Under the pieces are notes generated by a model. That model searched no databases, was not told the origin of the DNA, and saw nothing but the letters and a program-made list of their open reading frames with translations. From Ruditapes philippinarum (lineage: Eukaryota): DNA of 64,000 nucleotides. Location: the NCBI RefSeq assembly GCF_026571515.1, contig NW_026858768.1:124001-188000 (forward strand). The letters are read 5' to 3'. The first letter of the stretch is position 1. Each line of letters opens with the position of its first letter. The translations under genes were made by a program, and so were the position numbers. This document shows positions 7,761 to 63,676 of this stretch, piece after piece.

Positions 7761-10324
7761 TTAACGTATGAAAATGACCATGAAGATGTGTGTTGTAGAA
7801 AAACATATCTACGCCTCATACATACTTTATTTTCGTGTGTCCACTCTTTAACGGGAAAAAAGGGAATTAATAAAAAAATCTTATATAGTTACAGTATCAG
7901 TAATTATATTTTTGCTAGAATTTTTTTTATTTTGTATTGACATGTATTTTGAGTGTGTTGAAGGATATTTGGGTAGTATACAGGGTCCTGGGGTGGGCCC
8001 CTGGAGGTATATGGTTTGGTCCAAAGCCGATTACCTGTGGTGGCCAGACCCCGTGTTCACAAAGATTAGGGGATCAGAATCAAATTTAGAAAAATAAATA
8101 TTCTCCATTATTTGTCCTAATATTAATTTGCATGTTTATAAAATTTTACAGTTGATTCAATATTGATCTTGATCCTAAAATTGATCCTTATTTTGATCAG
8201 ATTATTTTTGTATTTGAACAACAATTGGGGTCACCACCCTACTTTTAGAGTTATAAGCCCTTGAAAATGAGACTTTTCTCTTTTAGGTAATTCTCAAGAG
8301 AAGACAACTCAAAAATAAGCATTTGGTAAATTATTTATTGTTCATTATTATTAGTTATTACGTTAGTTTAGCATCTTGTGGTTGAGCGTTTATATTATGG
8401 GTTGAGGCATCAGAATTGCAGCCACCGTTTATCCCTGCGTGACCGTAAGTGCCGACTAAATGTTTTATATGAAGTGAAGTGATTTTGACCCCTGGTGTTG
8501 CTTTAAATCTGTAACAGCCGGCAAACTATGTTTCAATACCAAAACACAATTGTAGTGTCCTTCAAAACATGGACATAACAGGAAGAAAATTCAATTTGCG
8601 TAAGTAACTACCAAATAAAATATGATAGACAGAATTTCAGCAAATTTGTGATCATGACGGCGAAATAAAGTAAGAAATATGAACATGAAATCAAATAGTT
8701 TGCCTGTCGAAATTTTGAGTTATCTGCACCAGAAAATGACTTGAAAAGACTAAAATCTCACGAACAAAAGAAAGATGGAGACCACATTTTTCATAAACGT
8801 GTTTCTATTATGATTTTCTGCAATCATATAAAGTTTAAGAAAACGTTTTGGTAACATTTTTCTTCGTAACAAATGTTAAGTTTCTGCGATAGAGTTTTTT
8901 TATCTGTACTCAATCCATTGCTGAGAAAATATAAATACAATAAGAATAAGGGACAAGCTGTTAAACTGAGCCTGCAATTTCGTGAAAATAATATTACAAT
9001 GCACATGCTTTTTACATAAAGTTATTAAATACAAATATAACAACATATTTGTTTACTTATTTTTACGAACATAAATAAATTAATAACACAAAAGAATTAA
9101 CTGTAATAAAACAGCCTTTTCCATAGGTAAAATAAAAAGCATTCCCAGTAAGAGAACGAACGCCGCCTCACCCGGCAGCCGCCAAAAGTACCAGTTAGAA
9201 AATTTGACAGCACATTCACTAGAATAGAGGGGCCCTATGTAAACATACATAAAAAAAGACTAATATATACGATTGTTTTATATTACCTGCGATACAACAG
9301 CGTAATTCATCTTTATTTACACAATAATACATTATAAATAAAGTAAACACAGACCTGTTTATCATGACTTCATAGCAAATAAACAATTAATTGTCGATTT
9401 TCTTTAATACATATATAAATAAAATTAGCACCCCTTTTAAAACAAGAAATGAAAATAAAGAATAATTTTTTTTTATATATTTAAAGGGTAAATTTTAATT
9501 CAAAAATTTATAAATTTAATTAACACACATTCTAGAATCACATTTTATGGTACAAAACGCAATTTCCTCAGAAAAAAAAAACACCATAAAAATGTGCACA
9601 TATATCTTTTAATATTTGTAAATTTGAACATAATAAGACATACATGTATGTGAAAATACACAGATATCTGATATACAGACAAGCACAAAATACGGAGTAC
9701 AAAAAATAATTCACTCAACCTTAAATAACAGTTAACATCCGTATTAAAGCTCATTGCTTTTGATCACATCAACAAATAGTTAATATGTATACAATGATAG
9801 TTAATGCCATTTGTTGGTTACAGGTACCTTAAATTATAACCACAGGGCGTTTGCCACATTCATCTTGCCAATAATGGTCACATTATCATAAAGTAATATC
9901 CCCTTTATCATCAAAATCCATTACCCATTTACTTTATGTTTTTGATGATCAAGGGGAGATCATTTTTATAATAATTTCACCATTATTGGCAATATACAAA
10001 TATCCAATATACAAATTATACGCATATACGACAGAACATGCATGCAGACGTAACTGTTAAGATGGATAACCCTCACATAGATTATTTTATTATATTGTCA
10101 CCATAATGGTACAGTCGGGTCATTATATAAGACAAGATCTTAACAGGAATATAATTATTTAGTCACAAGCATGAATACATTTTTTATCAATAACAGTGAT
10201 CACGTGACGTGAAATATGATCTCAAAACGATAATGACGACTGAAAAGGAATAGAAATGTGATACGCATACTGATAGGAAATAAATGTCTGAACACACGAA
10301 TATTTATTTACATTCCCTATGTTA

Positions 10325-45200: not shown

Positions 45201-48200
45201 AACATCATGACCCCAACATGTAGACAGGGGGAGGTATCTCTATCAAGCATTTTGACAGAATTATGCCCCTTTTTTGACTTAGAATTTACGTTAAAGTTTT
45301 TGTAATACCTCAAATTTTTTCAAAGTCCATTGACATATGGCTTTGAAACTTTGCACACTTATTCAACATCATGACCCCAACATGAAGACAGGAGGAGGTT
45401 ACTCTATCAAGCATTTTGACAGAATTATGGCCCTTTTTCGACTTAGAATTTACGTTAAAGTTTTTGTAATACCTCAAATATTTTCAAAATTCATTGACAT
45501 AAGGCTTTGAAACATGTTGAAATTTTATACTCTTCTTTGAGAGCATAATATGACATTCCAAGGCCTATAACGGTAATATGGATTTAAAGAAAAATTTTGC
45601 CTTTTTCTTTACTTACAAAATTTTACCTTTTCATCAAGGCTTTTTTTACTATCAAGCACTAAGAATAGTCGAGCGTTGCTGTCCTACCGACAGCTCTTGT
45701 TTTACACTCTTGATATATTCATTATTCTATTTTCAGTCCGTTTAACCGTCTGTCTGTTCAAAAAAATAGATGACCCGAAAATCCATTAAGGTAGAAAGTC
45801 CTTTTGTCTGTTCAAATTTTTTTGCGGCCTTAAGTCTATTTGGGAGTTTCATGATGTTTGAATCGATTGTTTATGTATTTGTTCTAAGCTAAGGACATGA
45901 GCAACATGACAAATGCACCATTTAATGGTCAAGGTCACAGTTTAAGTTAAATGGTTTGAGATGAATATCTTCTGTCCGATAAATATCACGTGCATGCACT
46001 TATTGTATGATATTAAAAATGTTTATGTCAATGGAAGGATAATAATACGTTAAATTTGCTTAATAAAGCGAAACATGTATAAGTATATGATTTTTTACAT
46101 TATATGAAGTGCATTTTTGGCAATACAATTTTCATGAATAAAACTTATATTTTACTAAATAAGCTTAAATAACTATTTCGATTTCTGTTGACAATTATTA
46201 TCATGTTCAATATTTTAAGGACCAGGGCGGAAGTGGTGTCATCCACATGGTCGGTGGATCCTCGGCACTGGTATTGTCCCTTATGCTCGGACCTAGGTAC
46301 AGTCGAATTAGGGACACGAGGTCTAAAATACTGTTTAACGATCTTGATGGACACTCACTGCCGGTAAGATTATTTTGTATATCATTGAGGGATGAAATTC
46401 TTTATTATCTTTTTCATAATCAATGAATCCGTTAATCAAGCCGTTGTGGTCTGCAGGGGATTTGAAACAACAACAATAATAACTATTTAGAACTCGTTTT
46501 AATTTCCTTGAAAACATTTTTCAGCAAAATAAGGAAAAGAACATTCATTATTAATTCTAGGAATGCCCTTTGTCCGTCACCCTGTCTGTATGTCAGTCTT
46601 TCTGTCTGTGTGTCCGCTCCATATTTCCCACATTCTGTGAATGATTTTTACGAAACTGGGATCAAATATTAAGTTCACTTAGACGATGTAAAGGAGATAC
46701 GAGTCAGCTATTTTGGATCAAGGTCACTCTTGAAGGTCGAATGTCCTGTGTTTCGTGTCCGCTCCATATCTCTTAAATTCTTTAAAAGGTTTTCATAAAA
46801 CTGCTCAAAAGTTCAGTTCACTAAAACCGTATTATAAGAGCTCGTTCAACTGTCCTAGATAATGGTCAGCTGTATTGCTACAAAGGTATCGTGGTGGGGG
46901 ATATAGCTATCCTTTGGACTGCCCTGTGGTACATAAAGCCTCGGTCTCACTTACTCCCGGCAGAGCCCAGGACCATCCCGGTAAGTTACCGGGATGATCC
47001 GGGACGATCCGGGATGAAATTATTGTTGCGGTCACACTTACCCCGGCAGCACTACGGTAGTTCTCTACTAACCACCCAGGATGCGCTCCGGATCATCCAG
47101 GCAGAGCCCAGGTGAAGCTACGGTTCATGCCGGTGCTTCCCCGGTCGTTCCCGGATGACGCCGGAAGAGCCCCGGTTGACCCAGGCAGAGCCCCGGTCGA
47201 TCCAGGCAGAGTCCCGGCAGAGCCCAGTACGATCCAGGCAGAGCCCCGGTAGAACCCCGGTGGATTGAAAACGCCCGAAAATGATAACATTGATACATAA
47301 TTTTTATATAATATAATATCTATTAGTAATTCGTGATGATTTTCTGAAAAATCCTTATGCCATACTGGATAGAAGCGAAATGGGAAGGGTTTTAATACAA
47401 ACAAGTGCAATCATCGCAAACTGTCGTTATTCTTTTGAAATGATCCGGGCTTTGCCGGGGCTCTACCGGGATCAACCGTAGCTCTACCTTTATCCTCCGG
47501 GGCTCTGCCTGTAGTTACCGGGGCTCTGCCGGCATATATCGGGGCTCTACCGTAGCTCTACCGTAGCTCTACCGGCTCTATCATACCCCGGATCATCCCC
47601 GGTTTGTGCCGGCAGAGCTACGGTGCTTTCCCGGTATAACCCCGGTCGTTCCCGGCAGAGCTAAGGATGAAGCCGGCAAAGCTATACCTTCCCGGATCAT
47701 CCCGGACCACCCCGGTAATATTAAATATTTTATTCCATCCGGGGTCGAATGCCGGATGTTCCCGGATCATCCCGGATCATCCAGGACGTTGCCGGCAGAG
47801 TTACGGATGTACCCCGGTTGTTCCCGGTCGTACCCCGGTCGTTCCCGGATCACCCCGGACGTCTACCGGGGCTCTGCCGGGGCTCTGCCGGGATGTAAGT
47901 GAGATATTGGGCTATGCGTGCTACAGTGTTAATTTTATTTATGTTTTGTTAATTTATGATTTACTCTAATTTTTCGCTATCTTGGGTTTTAGGCTATAAG
48001 AGGATACCTCGGTACTTTTTAATTTCAGTAGGTTACGCCTGCTTTTTAGCATCTACCTATTACATCTACGTTATATAGTCTATTTTTATTCATGTTTCAA
48101 TGTTAAATGTCTGTACCTATATAAGTTAAGATTTGAAATAGACACAAATGTTACTTAATCGGCTACCTTTTTTTGTATTTTAGCTCGAGATTATTGGATG

Positions 48201-51200
48201 GTACTTTAATGTCATCTGCTACATTTGCTGTAACTTCGTTCGTCTGACATCCACGTGCATCAAGTGTCATTCAATAAGTTATGTCGTGGCACATGCTCTT
48301 GTAAACAGTGTGATAGCAGCTTCATCCGCGTGTCTGGGAACATATGTATTTATATCTATCATGAAGTCTTTGATGGTAAGAACACCTTTCAAACTTCTAT
48401 ATTATATTTTAGATATTGTTTGTTAGATATAGGTAACAACATTGTGTATTGTAGCTCAGATGCGCATTGATATAGTTACTATAGACCTTAGTGATTAGTG
48501 ATATAGACCTTAGTGATTAGTGATATAGACCTTAGTGATTAGTGACATGACAACCTGTGCATCATATACATATAATAATGTAGTTCTGTAAAACGTCCAT
48601 TCTGCTCATAGGAGAAGGACCAATGAGAATTTGACAGAATACCAGTGATATGATTGATTGCTGAGAAATTATCTTAGCGATAATAAACCGGACGGACTGT
48701 CAGGTAGACGGACTTTCCTTCTGTCGGTGGTATGAAATACAAATATACAACTTCCAGTTATAAATGAAAATTTCAAGTTAACCTTTTTTATATTATTTTC
48801 AGGGTAGAATACGCTTTCATTATCTTTTATCAAGGCAACTTGCTAACGGAGTCATTATTGGAATTGTAAGTAAACTATAATTTTATCATTTCAAACATAT
48901 AAAACTAAACTGTTTTTGTTAATTATCATTTCAATCGCAAACTAAGTTTTTTGTTGATAATCAAACAGTTTGACATACAGCCCTTGAGTTGTTATGATTA
49001 TTTTTAGAAAGACAAATAATAAAAAGAAATAAACTGATCGTATATGTTATAATTCGACTCGTTATTTTATATGGTCTTTTTTGTTCAGATTTCAGTTGCC
49101 GCCGGAAGTGACGTATATGCGCACTGGGCTTCGTTTGTTGTTGGTATTACAGCGGCTATAACTTATGTGATCTGGTGCCAGTTATTATATTTTTTCAGAA
49201 TAGACGATCCTACAGGCGTCATAGCTGGTATTATTTTTAATTTCTTTGCTATTATTACTATAGATAATTGTTCATATTGTTTATGCATAAGCTTGTCTAA
49301 GTCGAGCTGCTATGATCGTTGTGGTCGTGCAAAAAACTTTAATGTAGTCTATTATTCAAACATTTCAAAAGCTATCATCATTGAATTTGGTATGTTTGTT
49401 CTTTATGGTGAAGTTGTTTCGCTAGGGGTATGATTCTGAAAGCTTTATTTTTGAAGTTATACCTTTTTTAACTTATAATTCAAAATTGCTCATTCATAAG
49501 GCGACCGGTGGTGCTCTTGTTAAAAATGAAAGTAAAAGTACAGCTACAACTTAAAAAAAACCAACATGTTTGACAAATAATCATTCTACTTATTTTTTTA
49601 TTGAACAGTTAAATATATTAACAGCACAGCATTACTTTGGGTTTATTTGCAGTTTTGTAGTGATGGCGTATCATACAGAGATGAAAAGTTTTGCCTTTGC
49701 CTTACACTTTATTTAAGATCGAATTGACATAATGATGAATTAGAACTGATATATTGGTGTATGCACTTTCCTGGTATTCATGCATGTCTCATTTCTATTT
49801 ATAGTACATTTGGGCGGTGGTCTGTGGGGAGTTATATGTGTCAACATACTGAGGGAGGGTAATGGACTAGTTTTTGCAGATAACACATCAACCGCTGCAT
49901 TGGTAATGTTCTTTTGTACTTTATTTGTTGGCATCTCAAAAACTACCGAAGAGAATGGATTGAAATTTTACACACTTATTTGAGAGCATAATAGGAGGTC
50001 ACTGTCAAAGGCTCATAACTCTTTGACAGAATTATGACACTTTTTGAACTTTGAAAATTCTTCAAGGTCCAGGCTTTTGTTTCAAGCACTGAGAATAGTC
50101 GAGTACGCTGTCCTATCGACAGCTTTTGTTTGTTTTGTGTTGGCAAAAAAAATGATGTGAATATCGTAAGGATAAAGCTATGTATATAAATGACTAAAAG
50201 GGAAAAATATACCATTTCAACCCCATATGTTCAAAATGTTAACATAGCTAGATGCACAGCGGACTGACATTTTCTCTTCTAGTGTTCTGTAAAGCTTACA
50301 TTGGTTTGATTTAACATTATCGTGATTTTAATGGCATGTGCCAAACATAATCAGTTAATCACGACGACCAGTTACAAAATCATATTCAAGACTGAAACTT
50401 TGGCGTTGTTTTCTTTCCATATATTTTATCAGACTGTAGGCGTACCGCCTAAGACTCAAAGTTTTTAGATTTGTATAATTCTTTGAATTATTATAAAACA
50501 AACATCAGGAAAAAGAAAAACAACAAAACGCTTACAATTTGGCATGCTGAGGCTTATGGACGGATGTAATTCAAACAATAAACAACATTTTTACGAAAAT
50601 TCAATAATTTTAATAAATGAATATTTCAAAACTCCCTTTTAGCAAAGTTCGAAATATCGCAAAACGTTTAAAAACATATACAAATAATACAAATAATATT
50701 CCATATTTTAAAAGTATATCGTCTGTTTCATCATCTGAAAATAGAATAGATTTATTTATTTATTTGTTTATTTTTTTTTTCAAAATGAATTATAGTCATA
50801 TAAACTTTTATAATATCAAACGTCTTACTTATCAAATATTAATGTTCTTGCAAGAGAAGTTATGTCGGTGAATTCATACGCGAGAAAATGTGCCTTAATT
50901 TAGGTTACTAGTATTTTGTTTTTGCATAGCAACGAAGCACGACTTAAAAAGGTCTATAAAAATGTTGTTATTTAGCGTTCATGTTGATTCAGCGAAAATA
51001 GTAGCAGAAAACGATATGTGAAATGAAACGAAACTATAAAAAACTAAAACACGATTTAATATGAATATCAAGTATGTATAAAGCGCAATGCACTTACTTT
51101 TCTATGAGTTTCCATTTGGAAGATCGTACACATTCTTGTCGCCTGCATTAATATCGGAAACATCTGTAAAATAATAATTTTCAAACAAGTATGCGTTATT

Positions 51201-54200
51201 CTAGCAATTAACGATAGGGCATTTAAGTAATATAACAAACGGCACCAGCCTATTCTCTGTTGTTAACCTTAGTTGGGCATTTAATTAAGTCAGATTTCCA
51301 AACTATATACATGTAACTGAAATAAACTGGAGAAATAAAATGAGCTTACCTATGAAATCCGAATAGGCTTTTGGTTTGTTGGGTTTGTTTGCTGATTGGT
51401 TGATGTCGGTCTCCTTGGCAATAGCTGACAAACTCTGTGTGACAGCAATGTCGGCTATTTCTAGAATCATAAAGAATAAAGTTCTTGTCATAAATAATTC
51501 CTTTGAATTGTACTCGTATATTGTGCAACATTCATAATGAATCAAATGGATAAATTTTGTCTTAAGGAGATTCTTATGATAGTTATTTTTTTCAAATTAA
51601 GTTCGACTTATAGATCTATGAACTTTCTTATCTTTGGGTTTTTTTATTATTTAATCTTCGGTTTTATCTCACTTGTGCTTTAAAAACAACAATTGGTGTT
51701 ATATATATTTTGTTCTTTGCATTGAATTCTACTTACGGCTGATCACACTTGATGTCATGGAAATATTGTCGTCTGCCTCAACTTTGATCAGTTTGGTGTT
51801 GCTTAGCAACTGTGAGTCACACGTCAATGTGTCGACTGCTGATTTTAGAATTCCTGCTACATATTCCTCAACTTTTATGAAAGATACAAAAAATAAGAAA
51901 TTTGCAAAGTTATTTAATAGTACAGTCCCTGAGGACCTTTTGTGTGCAAAAAAGGTCCATAGATAAATCTTATACCAATGTAAAGCTAAATGTTTGAAGT
52001 TTACAAAAATTTTGGGTAGACATGTCGGATCATGGTACGTTTTGAGAAATCCAAGATGGCCGCCAAGATGGCCGCCAAATTATTGAAAAATGGCTAATAC
52101 GCAATTTTATATGATAAAATTAGTTCTTTTTGTATTTATTTTGGTACAGGTGATGTTAAAAAAACTTCACATCCTATTGGAACAATATGAAAATGGGAGG
52201 CATTTCCATTATTTTTTCATATTCTCTGAATTTCATAGATCAATTTTTGCTAAAAAATGCATGAAAAAATTATCCAAAAAAATTGATAGTGGGGCTGACA
52301 TTTTTTTCCTACCAGCTAAAGGCTTAGCGGTGTAAATGAATATTTTTACCAATATACTACAAAGACTTGAAACAAGATCATACTAATATCACCTTATTAA
52401 TTTAATCTTTACTGTAAAAAGAATGTGGGATCTGATATTCTTAAAGTGGTGGGGTAACGAAAACTAAGTCTCAGTATTTTGTTAACTGGTTTGGTTATGA
52501 TAATTAAAACTATGAGTAGTCAACATATATATTGCACTTTGGCATGTACCTAAAGTTATAAATAATTAAGAAACTAAGACTGATATTTTTGTTTATCAAT
52601 ATTCAACATGTTCTGTTGCCATGGCAACGGAGAAGTAAAATGAAAGACACACCTGAAACGTATGACACTTTCAACTTTTAGCATTTTAAGCATGTTGTTA
52701 AGAATGACACAAACTTACAGATAAATAATCTGTGCACAATGCCATGGTAACAAATTGAAAAAAAAGTAACATTAAAAGAAGTCACATTTCATTCTAGCAA
52801 ATTATCAACACAGATAACAGCCGATATTTTGAAATTTGATGAATAAATTTATTTCAAGAATTTGCATCATGCATTTGCTTTTTTCAAACTGCTATACATA
52901 GAAAAAAGGTCATGTTAAATGTGAATGTTGTTATGTTTGGAAAGGATAATTAATGGTGATAATAATAAGTAAAAGGCAGTCTTAAGGTAGAAATGTATAT
53001 AAACATTATCAAATGTTTGAAACTGTACATAGGGTAAACATTTAAGACTTTGCAGCTAAAACGAGAAATAAATAGGTCACTGGTTCAAATTCTAGGTCAA
53101 CCAATATCAAATTTTAATGACAATCGAATTTATTGTTGAGTTCAAACTTTTTGGTTATAGCTTGTATTATGAAATTCTAACTTGCATTAGATAAAATTCT
53201 AGGTCAACTGATCTCAGTGTATAATTCTGCATCTGAATTTTTACAATCAAAATACAAAGAGAATACTAGGACAGGTTTAGGTCAGCTGGCATGTCATATT
53301 GTGTCTGTTATCCAAATTTTGTTAGCTTCAAAAACAAGAAAGTAAGTCACGAAGTCTTAAATTCTAGGTCACCTTATAACAGTGGGGCCATGATTTGGAC
53401 AATCAAAGAGGAACACAAGACAATTCTTCCAACCAAATGGTCTTGCATTGTGGTTTCTGACATAAAGAGTTTTTTTATATAAAAATCGACATCTAAGCAG
53501 GGCCATTTTTATGCTCCCCGAAAAATTATGGGGGAGCATATAGTCGCCGGGCGTGTGTCCAAAACCTAGTCGGGGAGCATCACCTGGTTCAACCGGTTCT
53601 TGTTTTAATCCAGACTCATGATCATTATTTGATGCCTGCAAACTTAGCACTTTACGGAGAGTGTCGGATGTGAAGTCCAGGCGTCTCTTGTTCCACAGAC
53701 AACAATTGATCTCGGACATTGAGTTTTACGGTCATTTGTCTGTCAAGCTTAGTAGAAATTGGTCATTACTCTTCTGGTTATTTATCCATGAAAGTCAGAT
53801 AGTTCAACCAACCTTCAAGCTATCAACAAAGAAGTGTTGAAATTGGCGTATAACCCAGACCCGGCCCTTTCATGATTTGAAGAAACATGGTAAAAGTCTT
53901 CTAGAAATTGTTTCACATGCTCTAAACAATGGCGTTAAAGGGATGATTTTATAAAGGATTTTATATATAAGTTAGACTATGTAAATCAATTGACCCTTGG
54001 GAAAGGTTATTATAATCAAACGGATCATGCTTTTACCAAGCTTAGAATTTGTGTATTATTTCTATTATATGATTTATATCTTGACATAAATTGATATGGT
54101 CATAGAATGAATGCCTCACACTTAAATATCAAAGCATTTTATTTATGGAGAAGATAGTTTTCAAAGCCTTTAAAATAACTAAAAGTATACTAAAATACTA

Positions 54201-57200
54201 AAACAAGTAAAATGACTCCTTGGGTTAGGTCCACTTTGACCAGATTGTCAAGATTTGAAAAATAAATTAAGTTTTTTTTGACAATGCTTTTAACCCAAAA
54301 TCTAAGATCTGGGCATTTGGTTTTGGAAAAAAATATGATTTTAAAAAGTTTTCCTATGTGTCTCCATATGAAATAAGTTGACCCTAGGGGTGGGTTAAAT
54401 TTTCATTTGAATAAATTTTGTACTGGTCTATACAAGGCTACAACAGAAATAATTAGCTATAGGCATCAGTATGGGAGAAGTTATTTTTTTAACCTTTTCC
54501 TATATGTAAATTGAAGTGACCCCTGGCATAAATGAATTTGACCACAAGGTCGTGATTTCAGCAAATTTAATAGTATTATATACTAGGTCCTGCAGTTATG
54601 GAGAAGAATATGTTCATGTTTTTTCCTATATTTACACTGTGTAAAGAAAGTTTACTCCGGGGCTTCGCAAGAAACATGAATGTGTACTTCTTGACCTTTT
54701 ACCAACCATGACCTTGATGTTGTGCCATGTATATCATAAGCACATAGTCTCACGATGGTGATTATTTGTGCCAAGTTATTTAAAATCTTCCATAAAGTTA
54801 TGGAGAACATATAACATTGACCTTGGTTGCAGCGACCTGGATGTTGAGGTCTGTAAATTGTGTCGTGGTGGGGATCATTTGTGCTAAGTATTTTAAAAAC
54901 CTTTGAGTTGTCAATAAGTTATAGAGCGGACATGAAAAAAAAATTTTTTACATTGGACCGTTGAGTGTGAGGGTGGTGACTTGCTTATTGTGCTCTGCCA
55001 ATGGTGTCATAATGTTGATCATTTCTGTCAATTTATCTTAAAAACGTTTCAGAGGTTTAAAAGTAAGAGACAGACGCGAAATGTAGACTTTCTAACATAT
55101 GAGCTGTAAGTGTGACCCTGACCTTTGGGGTAGCAATTCAATAATTGCGATCTGCACATCGTCTCATAATGGTGATCAATTGTGCCAAGCTATTTAAACA
55201 AAATTTCATAGGTTTAAAAGTTTTGGAGGGGACACGAAATGTAGATTTTTATTCATTTGACCATGGCCTTTGGTGTAGCAACCCAATGTTTGCGTTCTGC
55301 ACATGTTCTTATACTGGTTATATTTGTGCCAAGATATTTTTTTTTAATTTCAGCGGTTAAAATGTTGGAGCGGACACGAAATTTAGACTTTTTTACATTT
55401 GACCTGAAAGTGTGACCTTAACCTTTTGTGTAGCAACCCAATTATTGCGCACTGCACGTCGTGTCATAATAGTGATCCGTTGTGCCAAGTTCTTTCAAAC
55501 CTTTACAGCGTTAAAAAGTTATGGAGCGGACATGAAATGTAGACTTTTTAACATATGAACTTGACCTTAAAGTGTGACCTTGACCTTGGGGGTAGCAACC
55601 CAATTATTGCGCTCTGCATATTGTCTCATTATGGTGATCACTTGTGCCAAGTTATTTCAAAAAATGTTCAGGGGTTAAAAAGTTATGAAGCGGACACGAA
55701 AGTGTTATGGACGGACGGACTGACAGACGGAGTCCATTCCTATAATCCCCTTTCCGCGGAAGGTGATTACTGATTAACAATGTTGGTTTAGTCCCATCTG
55801 AAAAAGCCATACATATAAAAGTTCAAGATCTTTTTATTTATTTCTGGGAATATTTGAAAACATTACGCATTGTCAGTTTTATTTTTAACTTCTGTGACTT
55901 AGATATACAATAATCCGATTTGTGCAAAAAACAACAACAAAACAAAATTTCTGTCAAATTTTATCAAATATAGCCTATTTTTACGTCACATCAACACTTT
56001 AAAAGGCTTTGTGGCGACTTTCCTGCTTTACTGAGGAAGACCTTAATATGTTTCTCTCCGTGCATTATTTCATAATATTGACACCTTCTGGTCATCTTTT
56101 AAGGCAAATCAGAATTACGAAGTCTATAAGAAAGTGAAATTTGGATTATTCAAATAAAGAAAACAGTAAAACTGTTTGTAAAATAAAGAAATCAAGGTCA
56201 TATGTTCATCTTGATTCCAAATTCAAATACGTCCTGAACTTAATCTTAATTTGGAACACACTAGTGTTCATGTGCATTACATACTACCGGACAATTTGAG
56301 AAATGCTGTTTTTCCTCATCTCCAATTACATTGAAACTATGGTTTTAAGACTGCACTTATATAATGACTTATCTAAAACAGAAAGCTTATATGAATTTTG
56401 GATACGTTCAGCCGCGGGTTATTTCACATGATTTATTGATATTTATTGATGATGAGAAAATAACGTAACTGTATCAGTTGATATGATTACCAATGTCTTT
56501 GAGATTTTATTTGAATGTTACCTGTATATCAGTTATAGCTTATTACTACGTGACGACAATTTACATACTTTTTTGTGTGAGTGGAACAAAAATCGCTCCC
56601 AAAGTTTTACAAACACATATGTGTCTTATAACTGATAAAAACGGTCTAAAACAAAAGCAAAATTTATCATTACACCAAATTTATTCAGTGCCTTTCTGAT
56701 ATATATATAGCATGTTCAAATGGGTTAAAATCAACAAATTTATATCATAGTTATAAACATTAAAAAAGAATACTCGACATTAAATGAAATTTCAACAATT
56801 ATACAAATCTAGATATGACTATGTAAAACTATTTGCATATAAACATACTCTTAAATTCTTTTCAACGTGATTTATAATAATATTATGAAACAGACCGCCA
56901 TCTTTTTAAATAGTCACATATTTCTAAAGAACGAAGTGACAAAACTCATATTGTTTACATATCGGAATTACTTATATTGTATAATTAATTTGAGACTTTT
57001 AAGTTTTAGTTTTGTGTACATTCTTCTGTATCTTGTTCTTAATGTATACTAGAGTTTCTCCCCTCTGTATCCGATTTTCAATAGGCAAAACAATGGAGAT
57101 TCTATACAACGTTTTAGGGATTCTGTTTTTCTCTATTTTAATGAGTTTAAATGGAGGGGTTGTTTTTGGTAATAAGACAAGATACCATTTGATGAACAGT

Positions 57201-60200
57201 CGGGAGTTTGTTGATGATCATTTAAGACATACTAACCGTATAACAAAGCATTAGGTGGTCTGACCTGTAGGTCACAAAATAATTTATAAAGAATTCTGAG
57301 GCAACGGTGAATATGGCCTATTTTTTTTTGCGTAACAAGACATCTATACAGGATTTATAATTTATGCTGCTCTATATTTTTTAGAATAGAAGAAAGTGTC
57401 AAATATTTAACACAAAATGGTGATTTTATCCATGTTTCTCCAAGTGTTACAATATTTCAGCTGGGCTTGTATTGCATTGAGATGAGAACACAATCATTTA
57501 GGTTTTCCAGATGCATCTATGGCACATTATCTTGAAGACGTTCTTCATCACAACATATTGACATATTGTCTATTCCTTCTTATCACATTTGATCTGTGGG
57601 ATTTTTTTTGCTTTATTTGTTATTTATTATTATTATTTAATGACCAATAAATGAAGAATGTTGAAAACTTTTTCTCAAATCGGGCCAAACATCAAGCATA
57701 AATTTTATTTTTCAATATAACTCTTGAGTAGATTTCATTATTATCTTTGCCTCTAAAACTTTAAGCGTTTTAATGTTACAGTAACGGTTCAGCAAAATGT
57801 TACCGATGTTTTAATTAAAATTTGTGTTTTTTCATAGAAAGTAAATGTATTGAAATTTGAAATGATTTTTTTATGTTTCAAATGTATCCAACTCTGAATT
57901 CTGTAATGCATAATCATGACATTAACTTCTACAACATGCTTGAAATGATAAAACTGAAAGCCTCATACGTTTCCGGGTTTCTCTCATTTTTAGCTCGACT
58001 TTTCTATGAAAAGGGGAGCTATCCTACTCGCCCCGGCGTCGGCGTCGGCGTTGGCGTCACACCTTGGTTAAGTTTTTCGTACCACCCCACTTTATTTCAG
58101 AAGTATTACAAGTATGGCTTTGAAACTTACCATACTTGTTCACCATCATAACCTCCATCTACAGACAAGAGTACATAACTCTGTCAAGGTTTTTGACAGA
58201 ATTATGGCCCTTTTTTGACTTAGAAAGTGTATTGAGCTTGGTTAAGTTTTTTGTACCACCTCACTTTATTTCAAAACCATTGGAGGTATTGCTTTGAAAC
58301 TGACCATACTTGTTTACCATCACGACCTTCATCAACAGACAAGAGGACATAACTCTGTCAAGGTTTTTGACAGAATTATGCCCCTTTTTGACTTAGAAAA
58401 TACATTGAATATGGGTAAAATCCACTTATTGCCTTAACCCTTTGAGATATTGCTTTGAAACTTTTAATGCTATTTCACATCATTACCCCCATCTGTACGC
58501 AAGAGAAGGTAACTCTGTCAAGGATTTGTTTTAAAAATTAAGGCCTTTTATCGACTTAGAATCTTGGTTAACTTTTTTGTACCAGTCAACTTTTTGACTG
58601 AACTGGTTGAGATATTAAATTGAAAGTTGGAATACTTGTTTACCATCATGGTCCCAAAACATGGGCAGGAGAAGGTAATTCTGTTAAGGATTTTATTTGA
58701 ATTATGGCCCTTTTTGACTTAGAAACTCAGTTAAAATTTTCATTCTTGTCCACTTGTTGACTTAACCATTTGAGATATTACTTTGGAAGTTGGAGTTCTT
58801 ATGTGCCATCATGAGACCTATCTGTAAGCAAGAGAAGATAACTCTGTGAAAATGTTTCTTGATTTGTACTTAGAAATTCCTAGTTAAAGTCTTGTGTGCC
58901 CTTAACTGTCAAAGTTTTGTTTTATAGGCAAGCACTAAAAAAGTCGAGCGCGCTGTCCTTCTGACAGCTCTTGTACCACTATGTTGCCATGGCAACAGAA
59001 CCAATTTATGTTGTTGGTAGAATGAAAATCTACCTTTTAAAAAATTAAAGACTTAAGAACATTTTAAAATGTAATCTTGTTGGTTATTCTTAGTCTTAAT
59101 AATCATTATATATCAGTTCACTAGAAATTGGGACTCAATTTTCGTGTACCCCACCCACTTTAGGAATGTCAGAATCCACATTCTTACACAATAAAAATAA
59201 AAATAAGGGTACATTTAGTAAGTTGTTGATCAGGTCTTTGTATAATATGGTAAAAATATTAGTTTTCACCACTATGCCTCGACTGATAGGAAAAAATGCC
59301 AGCCCCATGTCGATTTTTGATACTTTTTCATGCTTTTTTAGCAAAATTTCTCTATGAAAACAAGAGTATATGTATAAGAAAAAGGAAAAGGACCCCTTTT
59401 CATATTGTTCCAATAGGATGTGAAGTTTTAACATCACCTGTACCAAAATAAATACAAAAAAGAACTAATTTTATCATATAAATTGAGTATTAGCCATTTT
59501 TCAATAATTTGGCGGCCATCTTGGCGGCCATCTTGGATTTCTCAAAACGTACCATGATTTGACATGTCTACCCAATTTTTTTGTAAACTTCAAACATTTA
59601 GCTTTACATTGGTATAACATTTATCCATGGACCTTTTTTGCACACAAAAGGTCCCCAGGGACTGTACTATAAAGTACAATTTTAAGTATGAATGCGTTTT
59701 CTTATTGTAATTCTATAAACATATAGTTTAAGATCTAAATGTTCTGTTTTATTTTATGCTTTTCAGTGGATTACTGATTTATCCGTGAAAATTATATTTG
59801 ATAATTACACAGTGAAAATTATCAAAATATAATTTCACTTTTTTCAATGACGAAACTACTTTTTTAAGATTTTCCCCATGTGGTACCTCAATTTTATTTT
59901 TACCGACAATTCTGACAATGTCAGGCTGTTAAAAGAAATAGCAAAGCTGAAATAGATAAATAACTTAAATGTCAAAAGTAACACAGAGAGAAAACTTACT
60001 TCTATTCCTTCAAATTCCAATCACCAAATTTTGTCTCTAATTTTTTTTTGTTTCGTTTTTACAGTCTGAAAAATACATTCCTTCCCCATGCAAAACGGGC
60101 TCTTGATGACATTTGGGCATATTAAAGTATCCTACGAGCAATAACTGCCGTATGCTTTATGAAAAATTGAAAAGCATTGACAGCCATCATTCGTAAAATA

Positions 60201-62637
60201 AGTTAAAACAACCCAGCGTTCCTTCAGCAAGCTTCCAATTTTTCCATTTTCCTAGCTCCTTTTCTGAATGTTTTCACTTCTGTCAACACTTATTTTTTGT
60301 CTGTTACAATCCTCAAATAAGTTTTCTTTCTTTTAAAAAGGTGTATGACTAACAAATCCAAATTATATCCTTCTGAATCTTACACAATTATTTTCCTCCC
60401 ATGAAATACACAACTTTAAAAAATGGCTGCCGTTTACATTTTAGAAAGCCAGGTCTAATATAAATTCGCAGTAAGTAACAGAAATATGGATGGATGGTTG
60501 GAATTTTCTCCTGCAAGAATTGTTTGTTTTTTATGATTAAAACAAGCGATCATTCATATTTTTTTAATAAAATGAATAAATATCACCGTCATTTAACCTT
60601 GATTGGCGGACTTATTTTTCAGCTCAAGACTTCTTGTTTTAAATGAGAAATTCCGTCTAAATGGGGCTCTCAATGGGGGAAACAGATTTTAATATTAACG
60701 TTAAAATTATGGAAATTTCGTTTTAACTTGTTTTTAAGCATAAAATAAAAAGAAAATTTGTCTGTTTGTTGTGTAAGATGTAATTTTATTTCATCTCGTG
60801 AACTTTAAAAACAGTATTCTCACTCGTGGCTACGCCACTCGTGAGAATACTGTTTTTAAAGCTCACTCGATGAAATAAAATTTCATCTTACACACAAACA
60901 AACAAATATCCTCTATATCATGTGTTATACATGTATGTATATTGAGAACGAATTAAGGTTACAATTTGAACTACGTCGAAAATGATAGAAAATTATGAAT
61001 TTTTCCCATCTTGATTTGGAACTTGAATTTACCTTGTCTGTCAAAGTCCTGGTCATTTATGGTCCTATTATGATGAGTATCTGTCAGGTAAGATAAAAGC
61101 TTATTAGAATAAACAGAATTTGAAATTAACCTCAAAAAGAATAATAATAAAAAAAGAAATTTCATATCAGAAACTTGAATAAGGCCACATGCTGAGAGAA
61201 TTCCACATATTGTTTAAAGTATACATGAATAAAGGTAATTATTAAAGCGTATTTATGATTATAACATATTAGGTAAACTATGTGATTGGAATAAAATTAT
61301 AGCCTTTTAGAACGTTAAAATCACTGATAAAACATACATGTAGATAAATATTTGTTTATTTTTTTAATACAATCGAACGCGTTGATATAACTGAATTCCT
61401 TTACGTTTTGAAAGAAATGTTCGAAATTCAAATTAATGCAAATATCAGTAAGTTATGTGTTATGATAATAACTTACGTAGTATTTAAAAATTCATCACAG
61501 ACATATTAAATTTGTACAAATTCATTACTTTTAATTATAATATTTTAAGTCAATACACTAAGTTACAATAATTACACTAGAAACAAACCTATGCCAGTGT
61601 CTTTAGAGGCTAATATATCCGGTATAACAATATAGGATTTGGTCAACACCATGTCCCTAGCGCCGGTCTCATCTATGATTGTCTCTGGGTCCACTCTCTG
61701 ACCCCTCCTGCCGTGCAAGCGGCGACGTAGACGGTTCATGATTCGAGCCCACTGTATAATTAAAATGATTATGGCCATGTGTGGTTTTATTTACATTTTA
61801 TTGTTTTCATTTTTGATTTTAAAAATTTGATTGAACATAATCTACTTTTTTCGGGGGAGCGGGGATTAAATATTTCTATATCTATTACACATGACAACGG
61901 GAAAAAGTTAAACGAAATTTGTTGTTTACAGTAAAATCAACGCTGATATATTAATACATATATTGTTAATGTCTTTCGATTATGTTACAGAAAATATTGT
62001 TCATCTATTCCTGCATAAAGTGAGGTCTTTCTCCAACTTAAAAAGTTCTAAAAATCGCCATGTGATCTCTACTGCCCCCCCCCCTTCCTCCAAACTAGGC
62101 TAGAGAGTAAAAAAGTAAAATTAAGAATGATATTACGGTAAGGATAATTAAAGTACTATATGTGTATTTACTCTTTTGTTACACGCATCTCTCAGTCTCA
62201 CACACCAAGTAAAACAGCCTGTTTTCTCGTCTTCAGACATTGCAAAGTATGTTGTCGTAGTCAACGCCAATGTTAAGTTTGTTATCGTTACTAAAGAGCG
62301 ACGTTGAACGTTTAATGACGTCATGACGTCAGATGAGAAAGGGAGATAATTCAATGTATTTCCGAATGCAATAGATTTATTAAAAACATTTAAAACATCG
62401 GGAACAATCACTTTACATGCCTGTCGCTGGTGACAACTATGTTGAGCTATGTCATTCTATCAACATGTTTATCTCCTTAACATTTTACTCAAGTGCTTTA
62501 GGTCGAATAATTGCCTTTCAGCCTTGAAAATAAAAAAAGGTATCGGTGATAATTCATTTTTTTATTATTTTGATTATTATTATTTGTTATTGTTGTTGTT
62601 GTCGGTGTAATTATTATTATCATCATCATCGTCGTCG

Positions 62638-62698
<61 letters not shown>

Positions 62699-63676
62699 TA
62701 TTATTTACAACAAGTCATAATATTGAAAATTAATGTTAATAAAACAACCGTTTTCTCAATTTTTATTTGTAAGGCAATATTATGGAACGTCATTATCGCC
62801 GTTACAATGGCAACACTCTCAGCATTGTTGACATGCGCCGTGTTACTGATTCCAAGAGGCTTAGACCTCGTACCTATCAAACATGGCCAGGAGATACAAG
62901 GTACGTTAGTTTCTTTCCATTCTTCTATACATAGGGATGACGTCATATATGTATGGCGCTATGCTTCGAACTTCTTAGCACAATCCGCAGAAACTTTGCT
63001 TTACGGAAACTGGAGGTCAGGAAGAAGGCTGTCTATCAGATGGTCATTTTTTCCGTCCATAGAAAATAATTACAATATCACACCACGCTGAATATTTCAA
63101 ATTGATTTGCCCATCACTTTATCTCTACAATACTAGTCATCATTTCAGGGAAAATAAAAATAGCTACCGATTTAACAGCAAGACCGGACGACACGGATGG
63201 AATAAGTTGCCACCTGGACACTCTATATTTATGGTGTCATTTGGAAGCCTTCAAATTAATGGCATAGATCTAGTTTTCATGTCAAAACTAGAAGTTGACC
63301 TGTTGATGTTTTCGGGTCTTGAGTTATAGTTGCACTTTTTCAAATATACAGCTCTTTGTTCTATTGAAATGTGATGAAATAAATTTGAGTTTATTTCAGT
63401 AATGAACTTTGTAATGGGTTTGACAATTTTGTTATTTTAAGATATTGTTTGACGTCTTAACATTATATCACATTACAATTGACAGAGTCAAGTTGTGACT
63501 ATTTGCTTTGAGCAGCTAACTACAATAAGATCATTACTGTGCATTACATGTAGAAGAATTCACAGATCTACTATCTAATAGTTTAATGATTGCAGGTATA
63601 GATATGGTATTCCTGCAACAACAAGCATATCCTAGTGGTGACATTGTTACACCATTTACAACAGATTTTATTGAAG
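42289..63676 (+). CDS. amt: Divergent ammonium transporter (Amt family), at least 12 exons, continues beyond the window
   Basis: Phase-consistent exons: 42289-42409, 43141-43260, 43887-43976 (CQIGFAMVQSG), 44335-44562 (FWAVGYA..WLLQF..ER), 44765-44853 (RWAW), 46220-46363 (DQGGSGVIHMVGG..LGPR..GHSLP), 48184-48375, 48803-48865 (NG), 49089-49227 (IDDP), 49805-49902 (VHLGGGLWG), 62774-62900, 63596-63676 (GID..AYP). The first two exons are the least certain. Confidence 0.9.
42697..43003. mobile_element. TTAA-flanked MITE in Amt intron 1
   Basis: ttaa|agctgcataccttcagata ... tatctggaggcatgctgct|ttaa, i.e. inverted termini with TTAA on both sides. Confidence 0.8.
44872..45700 (+). mobile_element. 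HINE/Helentron-like element in Amt intron 5
   Basis: Subterminal inverted repeats gctcgactattc / gaatagtcgagc, a (cgtcgg)n microsatellite, about 164-bp internal tandem units, a 3' hairpin gctgtc-ctacc-gacagc and a tcttgt end. Confidence 0.85.
46937..47913. mobile_element. GC-rich non-autonomous TIR element with CCCGG/GGCAGAGCCC subterminal repeats
   Basis: Inverted ends agcc..tctcacttac.tcccggcagagccc / gggctctgccgggatgtaagtgaga..ggct, with an AT-rich core at about 47280-47440. Confidence 0.8.
48478..48546. repeat. 22-bp tandem repeat, 3 copies
   Basis: Unit atagaccttagtgattagtgat. Confidence 0.85.
49935..50130 (+). mobile_element. 3' fragment of a HINE-like element
   Basis: gaatagtcgag..gctgtcctatcgacagcttttgt end, as in the 44872-45700 copy. 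Confidence 0.65.
51102..62240 (-). CDS. Uncharacterised ~195-aa protein; antisense gene nested in Amt intron 10 (candidate small AKAP-like protein)
   Basis: Six GT-AG exons with matching phases: 62240-62172, 61751-61589, 61080-61033, 51871-51737, 51460-51350, 51163-51102 (TAG). Total 588 nt with no internal stop. Confidence 0.75.
54660..55775 (-). mobile_element. Reverse-oriented HINE-like element with tgaccttgacc tandem units
   Basis: Repeated blocks gagcggacacgaaatgtagacttt / tgtgaccttgacctt / tgtgccaagtta, and a (gacg)n microsatellite next to tataatcccc. Confidence 0.65.
57987..58974 (+). mobile_element. HINE/Helentron-like element nested inside the long-TIR element
   Basis: gctcgactttt / aaaagtcgagc inverted repeats, (cgtcgg)n, internal tandem units, a 3' hairpin gctgtc..gacagc and a tcttgt end. 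Confidence 0.85.
60757..60906. repeat. 150-bp palindrome (about 73-bp arms, 3-nt loop)
   Basis: ...gtgtaagatg..attttatttcatc..ctttaaaaacagtattctcactcgtggc-tac-gccactcgtgagaatactgtttttaaag..gatgaaataaaat..catcttacac... Confidence 0.85.
62316..62331. promoter_or_regulatory. Tandem full cAMP-response elements (TGACGTCA x2)
   Basis: TGACGTCATGACGTCA lies 76-91 bp upstream of the nested gene's ATG. A third TGACGTCA is at 62938-62945. Confidence 0.65.
62570..62705. repeat. Compound trinucleotide microsatellite (att/gtt/cat/cgt)
   Basis: Direct reading of the sequence. Confidence 0.9.

What the first reader, a model, noticed from the sequence alone, without database searches (positions are those of the whole stretch)
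51102..62240. Hidden six-exon antisense gene nested inside ammonium-transporter intron 10
Seen: Amt intron 10 (49903-62773, 12.9 kb) is far larger than the other introns. It holds six minus-strand GT-AG exons whose phases chain without a stop (0,1,1,1,1). The product is MSEDEKTGCFTWCVRLRDACNKR|WARIMNRLRRRLHGRRGQRVDPETIIDETGARDMVLTKSYIVIPDILASKDTGI|DTHHNRTINDQDFDRQ|VEEYVAGILKSAVDTLTCDSQLLSNTKLIKVEADDNISMTSSVIS|QIADIAVTQSLSAIAKETDINQSANKPNKPKAYSDFI|DVSDINAGDKNVYDLPNGNS*. A further GTAAGT donor lies 4 nt after the stop, implying a 3'-UTR intron. The ORF track shows only fragments, and I recognise no family.
Basis: seen in the sequence. Interest (0 to 1): 0.8.

Follow-up and report, generated by a model that had tools for sequence, protein, structure and literature searches.

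The report
Unannotated clam orphan-gene copy in Amt intron
The six minus-strand exons form an intact extra copy of a small, clam-specific gene of unknown function whose relatives are already annotated as 'uncharacterized protein' in the Manila clam and hard clam, so it is a real but fairly ordinary gene.

Summary
Six minus-strand GT-AG exons chain into 588 nt (195 codons plus stop), at 44% GC against 27% in the short introns.

This is not chance. The same genome holds three close copies and two diverged ones with the same boundaries and frames, and at least 35 more loci match exon 2.

Database hits name the genome as Ruditapes philippinarum. The family is in RefSeq as "uncharacterized protein LOC…" in R. 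philippinarum and Mercenaria mercenaria only. There is no Pfam or PDB match, and the fold is mostly disordered with three helices.

The window copy (A) has no protein of its own in the databases. Only its exons 5-6 appear, in a chimeric isoform X2 of the upstream tandem copy, LOC132754210.

Nesting is real. An RNA contig joins Amt exon 9 to 10, and exon 10 to an exon-11 sequence.

Intron 3 (9.2 kb) was about 245 nt before two repeat insertions.

A TGACGTCA cluster 60-106 nt upstream of the ATG is conserved across the family.

Weak points:
- No spliced reads of copy A were seen.
- RNA laid on it mostly carries paralogue letters and covers intron 4.
- A's private changes are 10 nonsynonymous to 3 synonymous.

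Verdict: a new member of an annotated, uncharacterised family. Function is unknown; the AKAP-like idea is untested.

The parts
62172..62240 (-). Exon 1 (CDS, 23 codons, ATG at 62240; donor GTAAAT)
   Evidence: It is 96% identical at protein level to exon 1 of RefSeq P0023/P0011 and 74-79% to the Mercenaria proteins. The same 1|2 boundary is found in distant members.
61589..61751 (-). Exon 2 (163 nt). It encodes the Arg-rich helix and the DPET…DMV block, the most conserved part of the family.
   Evidence: A profile of it hits 41 loci in the own genome at E<=1, 39 of them open frames without stops. Ten database proteins match at E<=0.001; five are RefSeq venerid proteins and five are short unnamed or 'hypothetical' ORFs from JGI or ENA contigs, or of unchecked source.
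61033..61080 (-). Exon 3 (48 nt, phase 1-1, variable; absent from the C4456/C1454 copies)
51737..51871 (-). Exon 4 (135 nt, phase 1-1), conserved amphipathic helix 1 (V..I[IL]..A[AV]D.L)
   Evidence: There are no indels against the paralogues.
51350..51460 (-). Exon 5 (111 nt, phase 1-1), conserved helix 2 (SQIAD[IM]AV..SL)
   Evidence: Its peptide is found letter for letter in RefSeq XP_060600789.1 (P0001).
51102..51163 (-). Exon 6, coding part, up to the TAG stop
   Evidence: Its peptide is found letter for letter in P0001.
62316..62331 (-). Two abutting perfect CRE octamers (TGACGTCA x2), 83-91 nt upstream of the ATG; probable core promoter element
   Evidence: Both octamers are kept in copies B, B' and A', and one in C4456/C1454. 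One full CRE plus half-sites lies at -62 to -106 in 4 of 5 distant family loci.
51911..59676 (.). A 7.77-kb inserted element with terminal inverted repeats of at least 197 nt, inside intron 3. It holds internal ~150-300-nt tandem repeats.
   Evidence: Inverted repeats I1, I2 and I4-I7. Hundreds of near-identical copies of its end occur in the genome. The site is empty in copy A'.
59710..60915 (.). A second insertion of about 1.2 kb in intron 3 (limits approximate). It holds a 61-nt-arm palindrome at 60770-60894.
49804..49902 (+). Host Amt exon 10 (VHLGGG… block); donor at 49902|GT
   Evidence: The joint 49226 to 49804 (GT..AG) lies in an RNA contig of run X1, and a loose end after the donor continues into exon-11 sequence. 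Translation.
62774..62900 (+). Host Amt exon 11, copy a. Its 3' end is inferred from a CAAG|GTACGT donor. A second copy (11b) lies at C7255:~196419, upstream of gene copy B.
   Evidence: The RNA loose end matches this sequence except for one letter, which is the letter of copy 11b.

Best explanation
The six exons are a structurally intact copy ('A') of a small protein-coding gene. The family is lineage-restricted and tandemly expanded in venerid clams, here Ruditapes philippinarum.

Shown:
- The exon-intron structure, frames and splice sites are shared with paralogues and with RefSeq models.
- Copy A sits antisense in intron 10 of an ammonium-transporter gene, 534 nt from the acceptor of Amt exon 11.
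- It is one of a tandem pair (B then A on the minus strand). The duplicated unit also carried Amt exon 11.
- Its intron 3 grew from about 245 nt to 9.2 kb through two repeat insertions.
- A CRE (TGACGTCA) cluster at about -60 to -106 from the ATG is kept in the six close copies and in four of five distant members examined.

Inferred:
- The gene is transcribed from this CRE promoter by a CREB/ATF-type bZIP factor.
- It gives a ~195-aa, largely disordered cytosolic protein with three parts: an N-terminal Cys-bearing, Arg-rich amphipathic helix (residues ~8-38), an acidic linker, and two conserved amphipathic helices.
- My best guess at mechanism is a small adaptor. The N-terminal helix would hold it on a membrane or a polyanion, and the two helices would be docking surfaces for a partner. 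A PKA regulatory-subunit dimer is one candidate, about 10% likely.
- All middle exons are phase 1-1 and multiples of three. Read-through from the upstream copy can therefore splice in frame into A, as RefSeq isoform X2 does (B exons 2-4 plus A exons 5-6).
For: - Structure.
- Paralogues with the same boundaries, open frames and GT/AG sites.
- Exons have no indel columns, against 11-38 in introns 4 and 5.
- dN/dS is 0.34-0.71 in all pairs, with dS up to 0.6.
- An exon-2 profile finds 41 loci in the own genome at E<=1, 39 of them open frames without stops.
- RefSeq proteins with the same junctions: P0022, P0023, P0011 and P0001, plus Mercenaria P0012, P0035 and P0037 at 53-60% identity.
- The contig length of 377287 ties LOC132754210 to the window's contig.
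- A's exon 5 and exon 6 peptides are exact in XP_060600789.1.
- CRE conservation.
- Helices and disorder: pLDDT 44; Atlas pLDDT 0.50.
- Nesting.
- Insertions in intron 3.
Against: - No spliced read or contig of this copy was listed in two RNA raw-read runs and one probable RNA contig set. Sampling was 4-6% of those runs, and even the Amt junction failed the three-read threshold in them.
- RNA laid on exon 4, intron 4 and exon 5 carries the letters of paralogue B' and covers intron 4 as deeply as the exons.
- Copy A has 10 nonsynonymous and 3 synonymous private codon changes, close to the neutral expectation.
- No database protein contains A's own exon 1, 3 or 4 letters.
- Function rests on sequence pattern only. 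There is no Pfam, PDB or Atlas match.
Confidence: 0.75

Rival explanations
1. Copy A is no longer an independent gene. After the tandem duplication and the 9-kb insertions into intron 3, it is drifting toward a pseudogene. It now matters only as a source of alternative 3' exons (5-6) for read-through transcripts that start at the upstream copy B (LOC132754210).
For: - A's private changes are 10 nonsynonymous to 3 synonymous, omega about 0.9.
- RefSeq uses only A's exons 5-6, in chimeric isoform X2, and has no A-only protein.
- RNA reads on exon 4 mostly carry paralogue letters: 9 of 11 at 51820.
- Intron 3 is 37 times its ancestral size.
Against: - All six exons, the ATG, the stop, ten splice sites and the tandem CRE are intact. 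By contrast, copy B, which RefSeq does annotate, has lost its ATG and has a 1-nt deletion in exon 1.
- Thirteen changes are too few to tell omega 0.9 from 0.4.
- Two RNA reads on exon 5 carry A's letter at 51415.
- A 9-kb intron is no bar to splicing.
- The reference letters in exon 4 may be private to the reference haplotype (run X15).
Confidence: 0.3
2. The family members are A-kinase anchoring proteins. Helix 1 and/or helix 2 would dock on the dimerisation/docking domain of PKA regulatory subunits. The N-terminal Cys/Arg helix would target membranes, and the CRE promoter would close a cAMP feedback loop. This is the idea of earlier notes s1-807852 and s1-807898.
For: - Both helices fit the published AKAP pattern [AVLISE]xx[AVLIF][AVLI]xx[AVLI][AVLIF]xx[AVLISE] (pattern quoted from memory) at the same aligned place in most of the 37 family proteins, and every protein has at least one match.
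- Predicted helices lie at 87-111 and 134-165.
- The CRE is conserved.
Against: - The pattern is unspecific: 28% of shuffled family sequences match it.
- No Pfam family at all matched even at E<=10, so none of Pfam's AKAP-related models did.
- There is no PDB relative.
- There is no N-terminal myristoylation glycine.
- TGACGTCA is bound by many bZIP factors, not only cAMP-activated CREB (established knowledge).
Confidence: 0.1
3. The chain of six open exons is a chance product of picking GT/AG sites in AT-rich intron DNA, and there is no gene.
For: Short ORFs and GT/AG pairs are common.
Against: Every exon is conserved in frame in five other copies, in more than 30 RefSeq proteins and across two genera, with dN/dS below 1.
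Confidence: 0.01

Closest known systems
RefSeq LOC132754210 (XP_060600788.1 / XP_060600789.1), Ruditapes philippinarum, 'uncharacterized protein'
   Same: It lies on the same contig and strand, and is the tandem copy about 7 kb upstream. It has the same six-exon plan and phases. Exon 2 is 99% identical in DNA. Isoform X2 ends with this window's exons 5 and 6 letter for letter.
   Different: Its own exon 1 is broken (no ATG, 1-nt deletion), so the RefSeq proteins start at an internal Met of exon 2 and have 168 aa. Copy A keeps exon 1 and would give 195 aa. A has a 9.2-kb intron 3 and 13 private codon changes.
RefSeq LOC132743496 (XP_060588000.1 / XP_060588001.1), R. philippinarum, contig C3967
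   Same: These are 195-aa proteins of the same length and exon plan, 90-98% identical per exon to copy A. They form a tandem pair in the same order, and isoform X2 is again a chimera of the two copies.
   Different: The genes are compact (about 2.7-3.2 kb), with an empty site where A has the 7.77-kb element. Amt exons 9/10 are not beside them. Whether C3967 is a second locus or a divergent haplotype is open.
Mercenaria mercenaria LOC123536999 / LOC123537602 / LOC123536998 (P0012, P0035, P0037)
   Same: They are the nearest relatives in another genus. They have 198-199 aa, 53-60% identity and the same order of conserved blocks.
   Different: They have a longer linker after exon 2 and a different C-terminal tail. 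Their genomic context was not examined.
A-kinase anchoring proteins (small lipid-anchored AKAPs such as AKAP7-alpha and smAKAP)
   Same: Small size, mostly disordered, and conserved amphipathic helices with hydrophobic pairs every four residues.
   Different: There is no detectable sequence relationship to any Pfam AKAP model, no N-terminal Gly for myristoylation, and binding is untested.

Membership tests
Venerid 'uncharacterized LOC132754210 / LOC132743496 / LOC123536999' family | N-terminal block G-C-F-x-W … C-x-[EK]-R | [WF]-A-R-x-x-N-R-[LM]-R-x-R … R-R-G … D-P, split by an intron after the [EK]-R | tested here: met
   The window's exons 1 and 2 carry all invariant residues of alignment A2. 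The intron position is shared.
Venerid 'uncharacterized LOC132754210 / LOC132743496 / LOC123536999' family | Two conserved helices, V-x-E-[YF]-V…A-[AV]-D-[TS]-L and S-Q-I-A-D-[IM]-A-V, each on its own phase 1-1 exon | tested here: met
   Exons 4 and 5. Helices are predicted at 87-111 and 134-165 of paralogue P0023.
Venerid 'uncharacterized LOC132754210 / LOC132743496 / LOC123536999' family | Significant full-length similarity to annotated members | tested here: met
   Tested exon by exon: 86-100% to P0001, P0022, P0023 and P0011 for exons 1, 2, 4 and 5 (lower for the short exons 3 and 6), and 61-79% to Mercenaria proteins for exons 1, 2, 4 and 5. The exon-2 profile gives E of 1e-29 to 1e-16.
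Venerid 'uncharacterized LOC132754210 / LOC132743496 / LOC123536999' family | CRE (TGACGTCA) cluster 60-106 nt upstream of the ATG | tested here: met
   Window 62316-62331. It is kept in 5 other close copies and in 4 of 5 distant loci.
Expressed protein-coding gene (this copy itself) | Spliced transcript carrying this copy's own letters | tested here: inconclusive
   No joints were listed. The RNA letters are mostly those of paralogue B', and intron 4 is covered. Only two reads carry A's letter at 51415. RefSeq isoform X2 contains A's exons 5-6.
A-kinase anchoring protein (AKAP) | Amphipathic helix that binds the D/D domain of PKA R subunits | not testable with these tools
   Only the degenerate sequence pattern could be checked. 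It is present in 37 of 37 members, but also in 28% of shuffled sequences.
A-kinase anchoring protein (AKAP) | Match to a curated AKAP or RII-binding profile | tested here: not met
   No Pfam match of that kind at E<=10 for four exon peptides and six full-length family proteins. No PDB relative.
Nested (intronic, antisense) gene in an Amt/ammonium-transporter host | Host exons on both sides are joined in RNA, and the host is an Amt | tested here: met
   PF00909 matches window 46199-46327 and 49092-49226. The RNA contig junction 49226 to 49804 and the exon 10 donor joined to exon-11 sequence are both seen. Which exon 11 copy (62774, or C7255:~196419) is used is open, but A is inside the intron either way.

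The most novel reading that the evidence does not exclude
The venerid family is a new class of CREB/ATF-induced small anchoring proteins. An N-terminal palmitoyl/polybasic helix would tether them to membranes, and two conserved amphipathic helices would dock PKA regulatory subunits or another dimeric partner. This would give clams an expanded, fast-evolving cAMP feedback module. The nested tandem unit (antisense gene plus the host's exon 11) would give both host and guest alternative, in-frame chimeric isoforms.
Probability: 0.08. Interest if true: 0.55.

Novelty: new member of a known kind. Interest (0 to 1): 0.27.

Why it matters
For annotation, a structurally intact 195-codon gene copy on this contig has no protein of its own in the protein databases searched, and therefore probably none in RefSeq. 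Its last two exons are assigned to a chimeric isoform of the neighbouring copy. The same pattern recurs on contig C3967, so tandem copies with phase-symmetric exons are being merged.

For biology, the family (at least 40 loci here and about a dozen proteins in Mercenaria) is an uncharacterised, clam-restricted, rapidly evolving group with a strikingly conserved CRE promoter. That makes it an easy target for expression and induction experiments.

The finding shows nothing new about gene nesting or about ammonium transport.

Tried and rejected
- Pfam on the four longer exon peptides and on six full-length family proteins gave nothing. The only hit was a chance-level PWP3A-B_N match at E=0.18.
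- The PDB profile search gave only chance hits, E of 0.77 or more.
- ESM Atlas gave no usable feature hit, and its structure hits had TM<0.5 on a model with pLDDT 0.50.
- AlphaFold2 with the 15-row family alignment gave pLDDT 44, so I ran no fold search; matches to such a model are meaningless.
- A literature search for six LOC identifiers found no papers.
- The search of earlier findings by words returned nothing.
I could therefore not see the RefSeq gene layout or the mRNA evidence around LOC132754210.
- All searches were exon by exon or used database proteins of paralogues. For the same reason, an exact look-up of A's joined protein was left out.
- I rejected the chance-ORF reading.
- I rejected the idea that the exons are TE-derived. 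The exons occur in only 4-6 close copies, whereas the flanking repeat ends occur hundreds of times.
- I rejected C3967 as a simple allelic copy of this locus. Collinearity stops 600 nt downstream of the gene and Amt exons 9/10 are absent there. A structurally divergent haplotype is still not excluded.
Full report
**1. The observation**

The window is G000:C7255:124001-188000. The donors are GTAAAT, GTTTGT, GTAAAT, GTAAGT and GTAAGC. The exons start in phases 0,0,1,1,1,1 and add up to 588 nt with one stop, at the end. They are 44% GC, against 27% for the four short introns. The GTAAGT four bases after the stop exists.

**2. More than chance: paralogues**

Searching the window's own genome with the two exon-bearing stretches found three close copies:
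- B, at C7255:~193444-195963, on the same strand about 7 kb upstream of A.
- B', at C3967:~731207-734395.
- A', at C3967:~737984-740723.

It also found two diverged copies, on C4456 and C1454. Mapping the exons one by one gave the following:
- In B', A' and B, all six exons have the same lengths, the same AG/GT sites and open frames.
- The one exception is exon 1 of B, which has lost the ATG and one base.
- In C4456 and C1454, exons 1, 2 and 4 are kept open with their splice sites at only 76-81% DNA identity.
- Exons 4-6 have no indel columns against the paralogues, while introns 4 and 5 have 11-38.
- Nei-Gojobori dN/dS, computed exon by exon with split codons dropped, is 0.34-0.71 for all 15 pairs, with dS up to 0.6.
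- A profile of the exon-2 peptides (A1) hits 41 loci in this genome at E<=1, 39 of them open frames without stops. Many are clustered, for example eight on C2370.

**3. It is an annotated family**

The same profile was searched against 1.84 billion representative proteins. It gave ten hits at E<=0.001. The full-length ones are RefSeq proteins named "uncharacterized protein LOC…" of Ruditapes philippinarum and Mercenaria mercenaria.

P0001 (XP_060600789.1, LOC132754210 isoform X2) lies on a contig of 377287 bases. That is the length of C7255, so the window is R. philippinarum. Word-based searches with P0001 and with a 15-row family alignment found 12 and 37 proteins. All are from these two venerid clams, apart from a few short metagenome ORFs. 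None has a Pfam domain or an informative name.

I compared the window's exon peptides with these proteins:
- LOC132754210 X1 (P0022, 168 aa) is copy B's exons 2-6, starting at an internal Met because B's exon 1 is broken.
- LOC132754210 X2 (P0001) is B's exons 2-4 followed by the window's exons 5 and 6, letter for letter.
- On C3967, LOC132743496 X1 (P0023, 195 aa) is B' exons 1-6.
- LOC132743496 X2 (P0011) is B' exons 1-2 plus A' exons 3-6.

Exons 3, 4 and 5 are 48, 135 and 111 nt, all phase 1-1. This explains why such cross-copy splices stay in frame.

No protein returned by any search contains copy A's own exon 1, 3 or 4 peptide. Copy A is therefore not annotated as a gene of its own.

**4. 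RNA**

Runs holding 51090-51880 were ranked. Four were laid on 48900-52100: X1 (contigs, probably RNA), X15 (contigs, evidently DNA: even cover at about 53x), and X21 and X23 (raw RNA reads, 4% and 6% of each run read).

Host gene:
- X1 holds a 1276-nt contig with the joint 49226 to 49804 (GT..AG).
- X1 also holds a contig that runs from the exon 10 donor (49902) into letters equal to window 62779-62808 except one base. That base is the one found in a second copy of this exon at C7255:~196419 and on C3967.
- Amt exon 10 is therefore spliced to an exon-11 sequence, and copy A lies inside that intron whichever exon 11 copy is used.
- Exon 9 matches PF00909 positions 264-308.

Guest gene:
- No joint was listed. 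That says little, because the Amt joint also failed the three-read threshold in X21 and X23.
- X21 covers 51361-51895 at 2-10x, 51040-51146 at about 4x and intron 5 at about 0-0.8x. Neighbouring unique intronic DNA is at 0. There is therefore a local transcript.
- The library shows both mate orientations equally, so the strand is unknown.
- Intron 4 is covered as deeply as exons 4 and 5.
- The letters at 51527, 51586, 51667, 51777, 51820, 51858 and 51870 are those of copy B', not A. The reads are mostly from a paralogue, mapped at the 95% threshold.
- Only two reads on exon 5 carry A's letter at 51415.

Expression of copy A as a six-exon mRNA is therefore not shown. The RefSeq isoform with A's exons 5-6 is indirect support that A-type 3' exons are spliced and expressed.

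The intron-4 signal is unexplained. Retention would stop the frame two codons after exon 4. Two RefSeq models of other members (P0018, P0004) also end just after exon 4.

The 3'-UTR intron is unresolved. Reads continue past the GTAAGT into 50933-51039, but there is also cover at 50505-50718 and none at 50719-50932.

**5. Is copy A itself under constraint?**

By parsimony against B, B' and A', copy A has 13 private codon changes: 10 nonsynonymous and 3 synonymous. With about 448 nonsynonymous and 125 synonymous sites, that is omega of about 0.9. The Mercenaria proteins carry the non-A residues at three of these sites (S, L, M), so the changes are derived in A. The numbers are small. In DNA run X15 the exon-4 sites are all non-reference, so some of them may be private to the reference haplotype. 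This keeps open the rival that A is decaying or serves only as a 3'-exon donor.

**6. Why the intron is so long**

In A', B and B', intron 3 is 242-246 nt. Against A', the window has about 9.0 kb extra between 51917 and 60916.
- Positions 51911-59676 are one element with terminal inverted repeats of at least 197 nt (95% complementary). The complementarity continues at lower identity for about 700 nt. Inside are 150-300-nt tandem repeats.
- Its end occurs hundreds of times in the genome at 97-99% identity.
- A' shows the empty site.
- A second insertion of about 1.2 kb follows. It holds a 61-nt-arm palindrome.

The size of Amt intron 10 is thus largely young repeat DNA plus the guest gene.

**7. 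The duplicated unit and the nesting**

The sequence upstream of A, including Amt exon 11, recurs upstream of B (C7255:196301-197584) and upstream of B' on C3967. The exon-11 reading frame is kept in all three copies up to a CAAG|GTACGT donor.

The tandem duplication therefore carried the host's exon 11 together with the guest gene. C3967 has no Amt exons 9/10 within 10 kb downstream of A', and the other family members lie on many other contigs, where Amt adjacency was not examined. Nesting in Amt is not shared with the C3967 pair and is not a known family trait.

**8. Promoter**

Two abutting TGACGTCA octamers lie at 62331-62316, which is -91 and -83 from the ATG.
- Both are kept in B, B' and A'. 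One is kept in C4456 and C1454, within otherwise diverged DNA.
- In five distant members (about 45% protein identity), four have a full octamer at -99 to -106. All five have half-sites near -62 to -68 and -81 to -88.

That it means cAMP control is an inference, because many bZIP factors bind this site.

**9. The protein**

The family alignment (A2) shows four parts:
- An N-terminal block with invariant G, F, W, C and a run of Arg.
- A variable acidic linker.
- Two conserved helices.
- A short conserved tail.

AlphaFold2 on the alignment gives pLDDT 44, with helices at 8-38, 87-111 and 134-165. The Atlas model has pLDDT 0.50. There is no Pfam, PDB or Atlas relative.

The AKAP-type pattern (recalled from the literature) fits both helices in most members, and at least one in all 37 members. 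It also fits 28% of shuffled sequences. The AKAP idea (note s1-807852) is compatible with the data but untested, and I rate it at about 10%. My working mechanism is a CRE-driven, small, mostly disordered adaptor with a basic, Cys-bearing N-terminal helix and two docking helices. This is inference throughout.

**10. Verdict**

It is a new, apparently unannotated member of a known but uncharacterised, venerid-restricted family. Its independent expression and constraint are unproven. Interest is modest.

Noticed in passing
G000:C7255:195738-195805 (L009:7738-7805, minus strand): Exon 1 of tandem copy B (RefSeq LOC132754210) has ATT in place of ATG and a 1-nt deletion. The RefSeq proteins therefore start at an internal Met of exon 2. 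The unannotated copy A keeps an intact exon 1.
   Followed up: partly
window 62774-62900; L009:~8419-8545 (C7255:~196419); C3967:~730970 (minus): Amt exon 11 (TM11 plus the GLD…HG motif) exists in three copies with an open frame, each upstream of a copy of the guest gene. The one RNA contig seen carries the letter of the distal copy. Alternative use of exons 11a and 11b is possible.
   Followed up: partly
C7255 and C3967 (RefSeq LOC132754210 X2, LOC132743496 X2): On both contigs RefSeq gives an isoform that splices exons of one tandem copy to exons of the next (B ex4 to A ex5; B' ex2 to A' ex3). These may be real read-through chimeras, or artefacts of mapping reads of polymorphic paralogues.
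   Followed up: partly
window 51461-51736: Intron 4 is covered by RNA reads of two studies as deeply as the flanking exons, with the letters of paralogue B'. Other unique intronic DNA nearby has no cover.
   Followed up: partly
window 54740-55700 and 58063-58860: Tandem arrays of units of about 150-165 nt and 300 nt lie inside the 7.77-kb TIR element.
   Followed up: no
window 49970-50183: A very high-copy repeat lies just downstream of Amt exon 10. Summed contig depth is about 18,000 in DNA run X15 against about 53 for unique DNA, and it is also abundant in RNA runs.
   Followed up: no
window 62560-62700: A long ATG/ACG/ATA trinucleotide microsatellite lies between the guest gene's promoter and Amt exon 11. 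It reads as poly-His/Arg or poly-Met/Thr ORFs.
   Followed up: no
window 47105-47829: A stretch inside the Amt gene (GC-rich bin, 45%) has 75-78% copies at C7255:191790-192494 (inverted) and C3967:736431-812, that is, between the tandem gene copies. It is probably another repeat.
   Followed up: no
L012 (C4456) and L013 (C1454): The diverged copies lack exon 3 and exon 5. RefSeq models them as 140-aa and 137-aa proteins (P0024, P0018), one of which ends in intron-4 read-through.
   Followed up: partly
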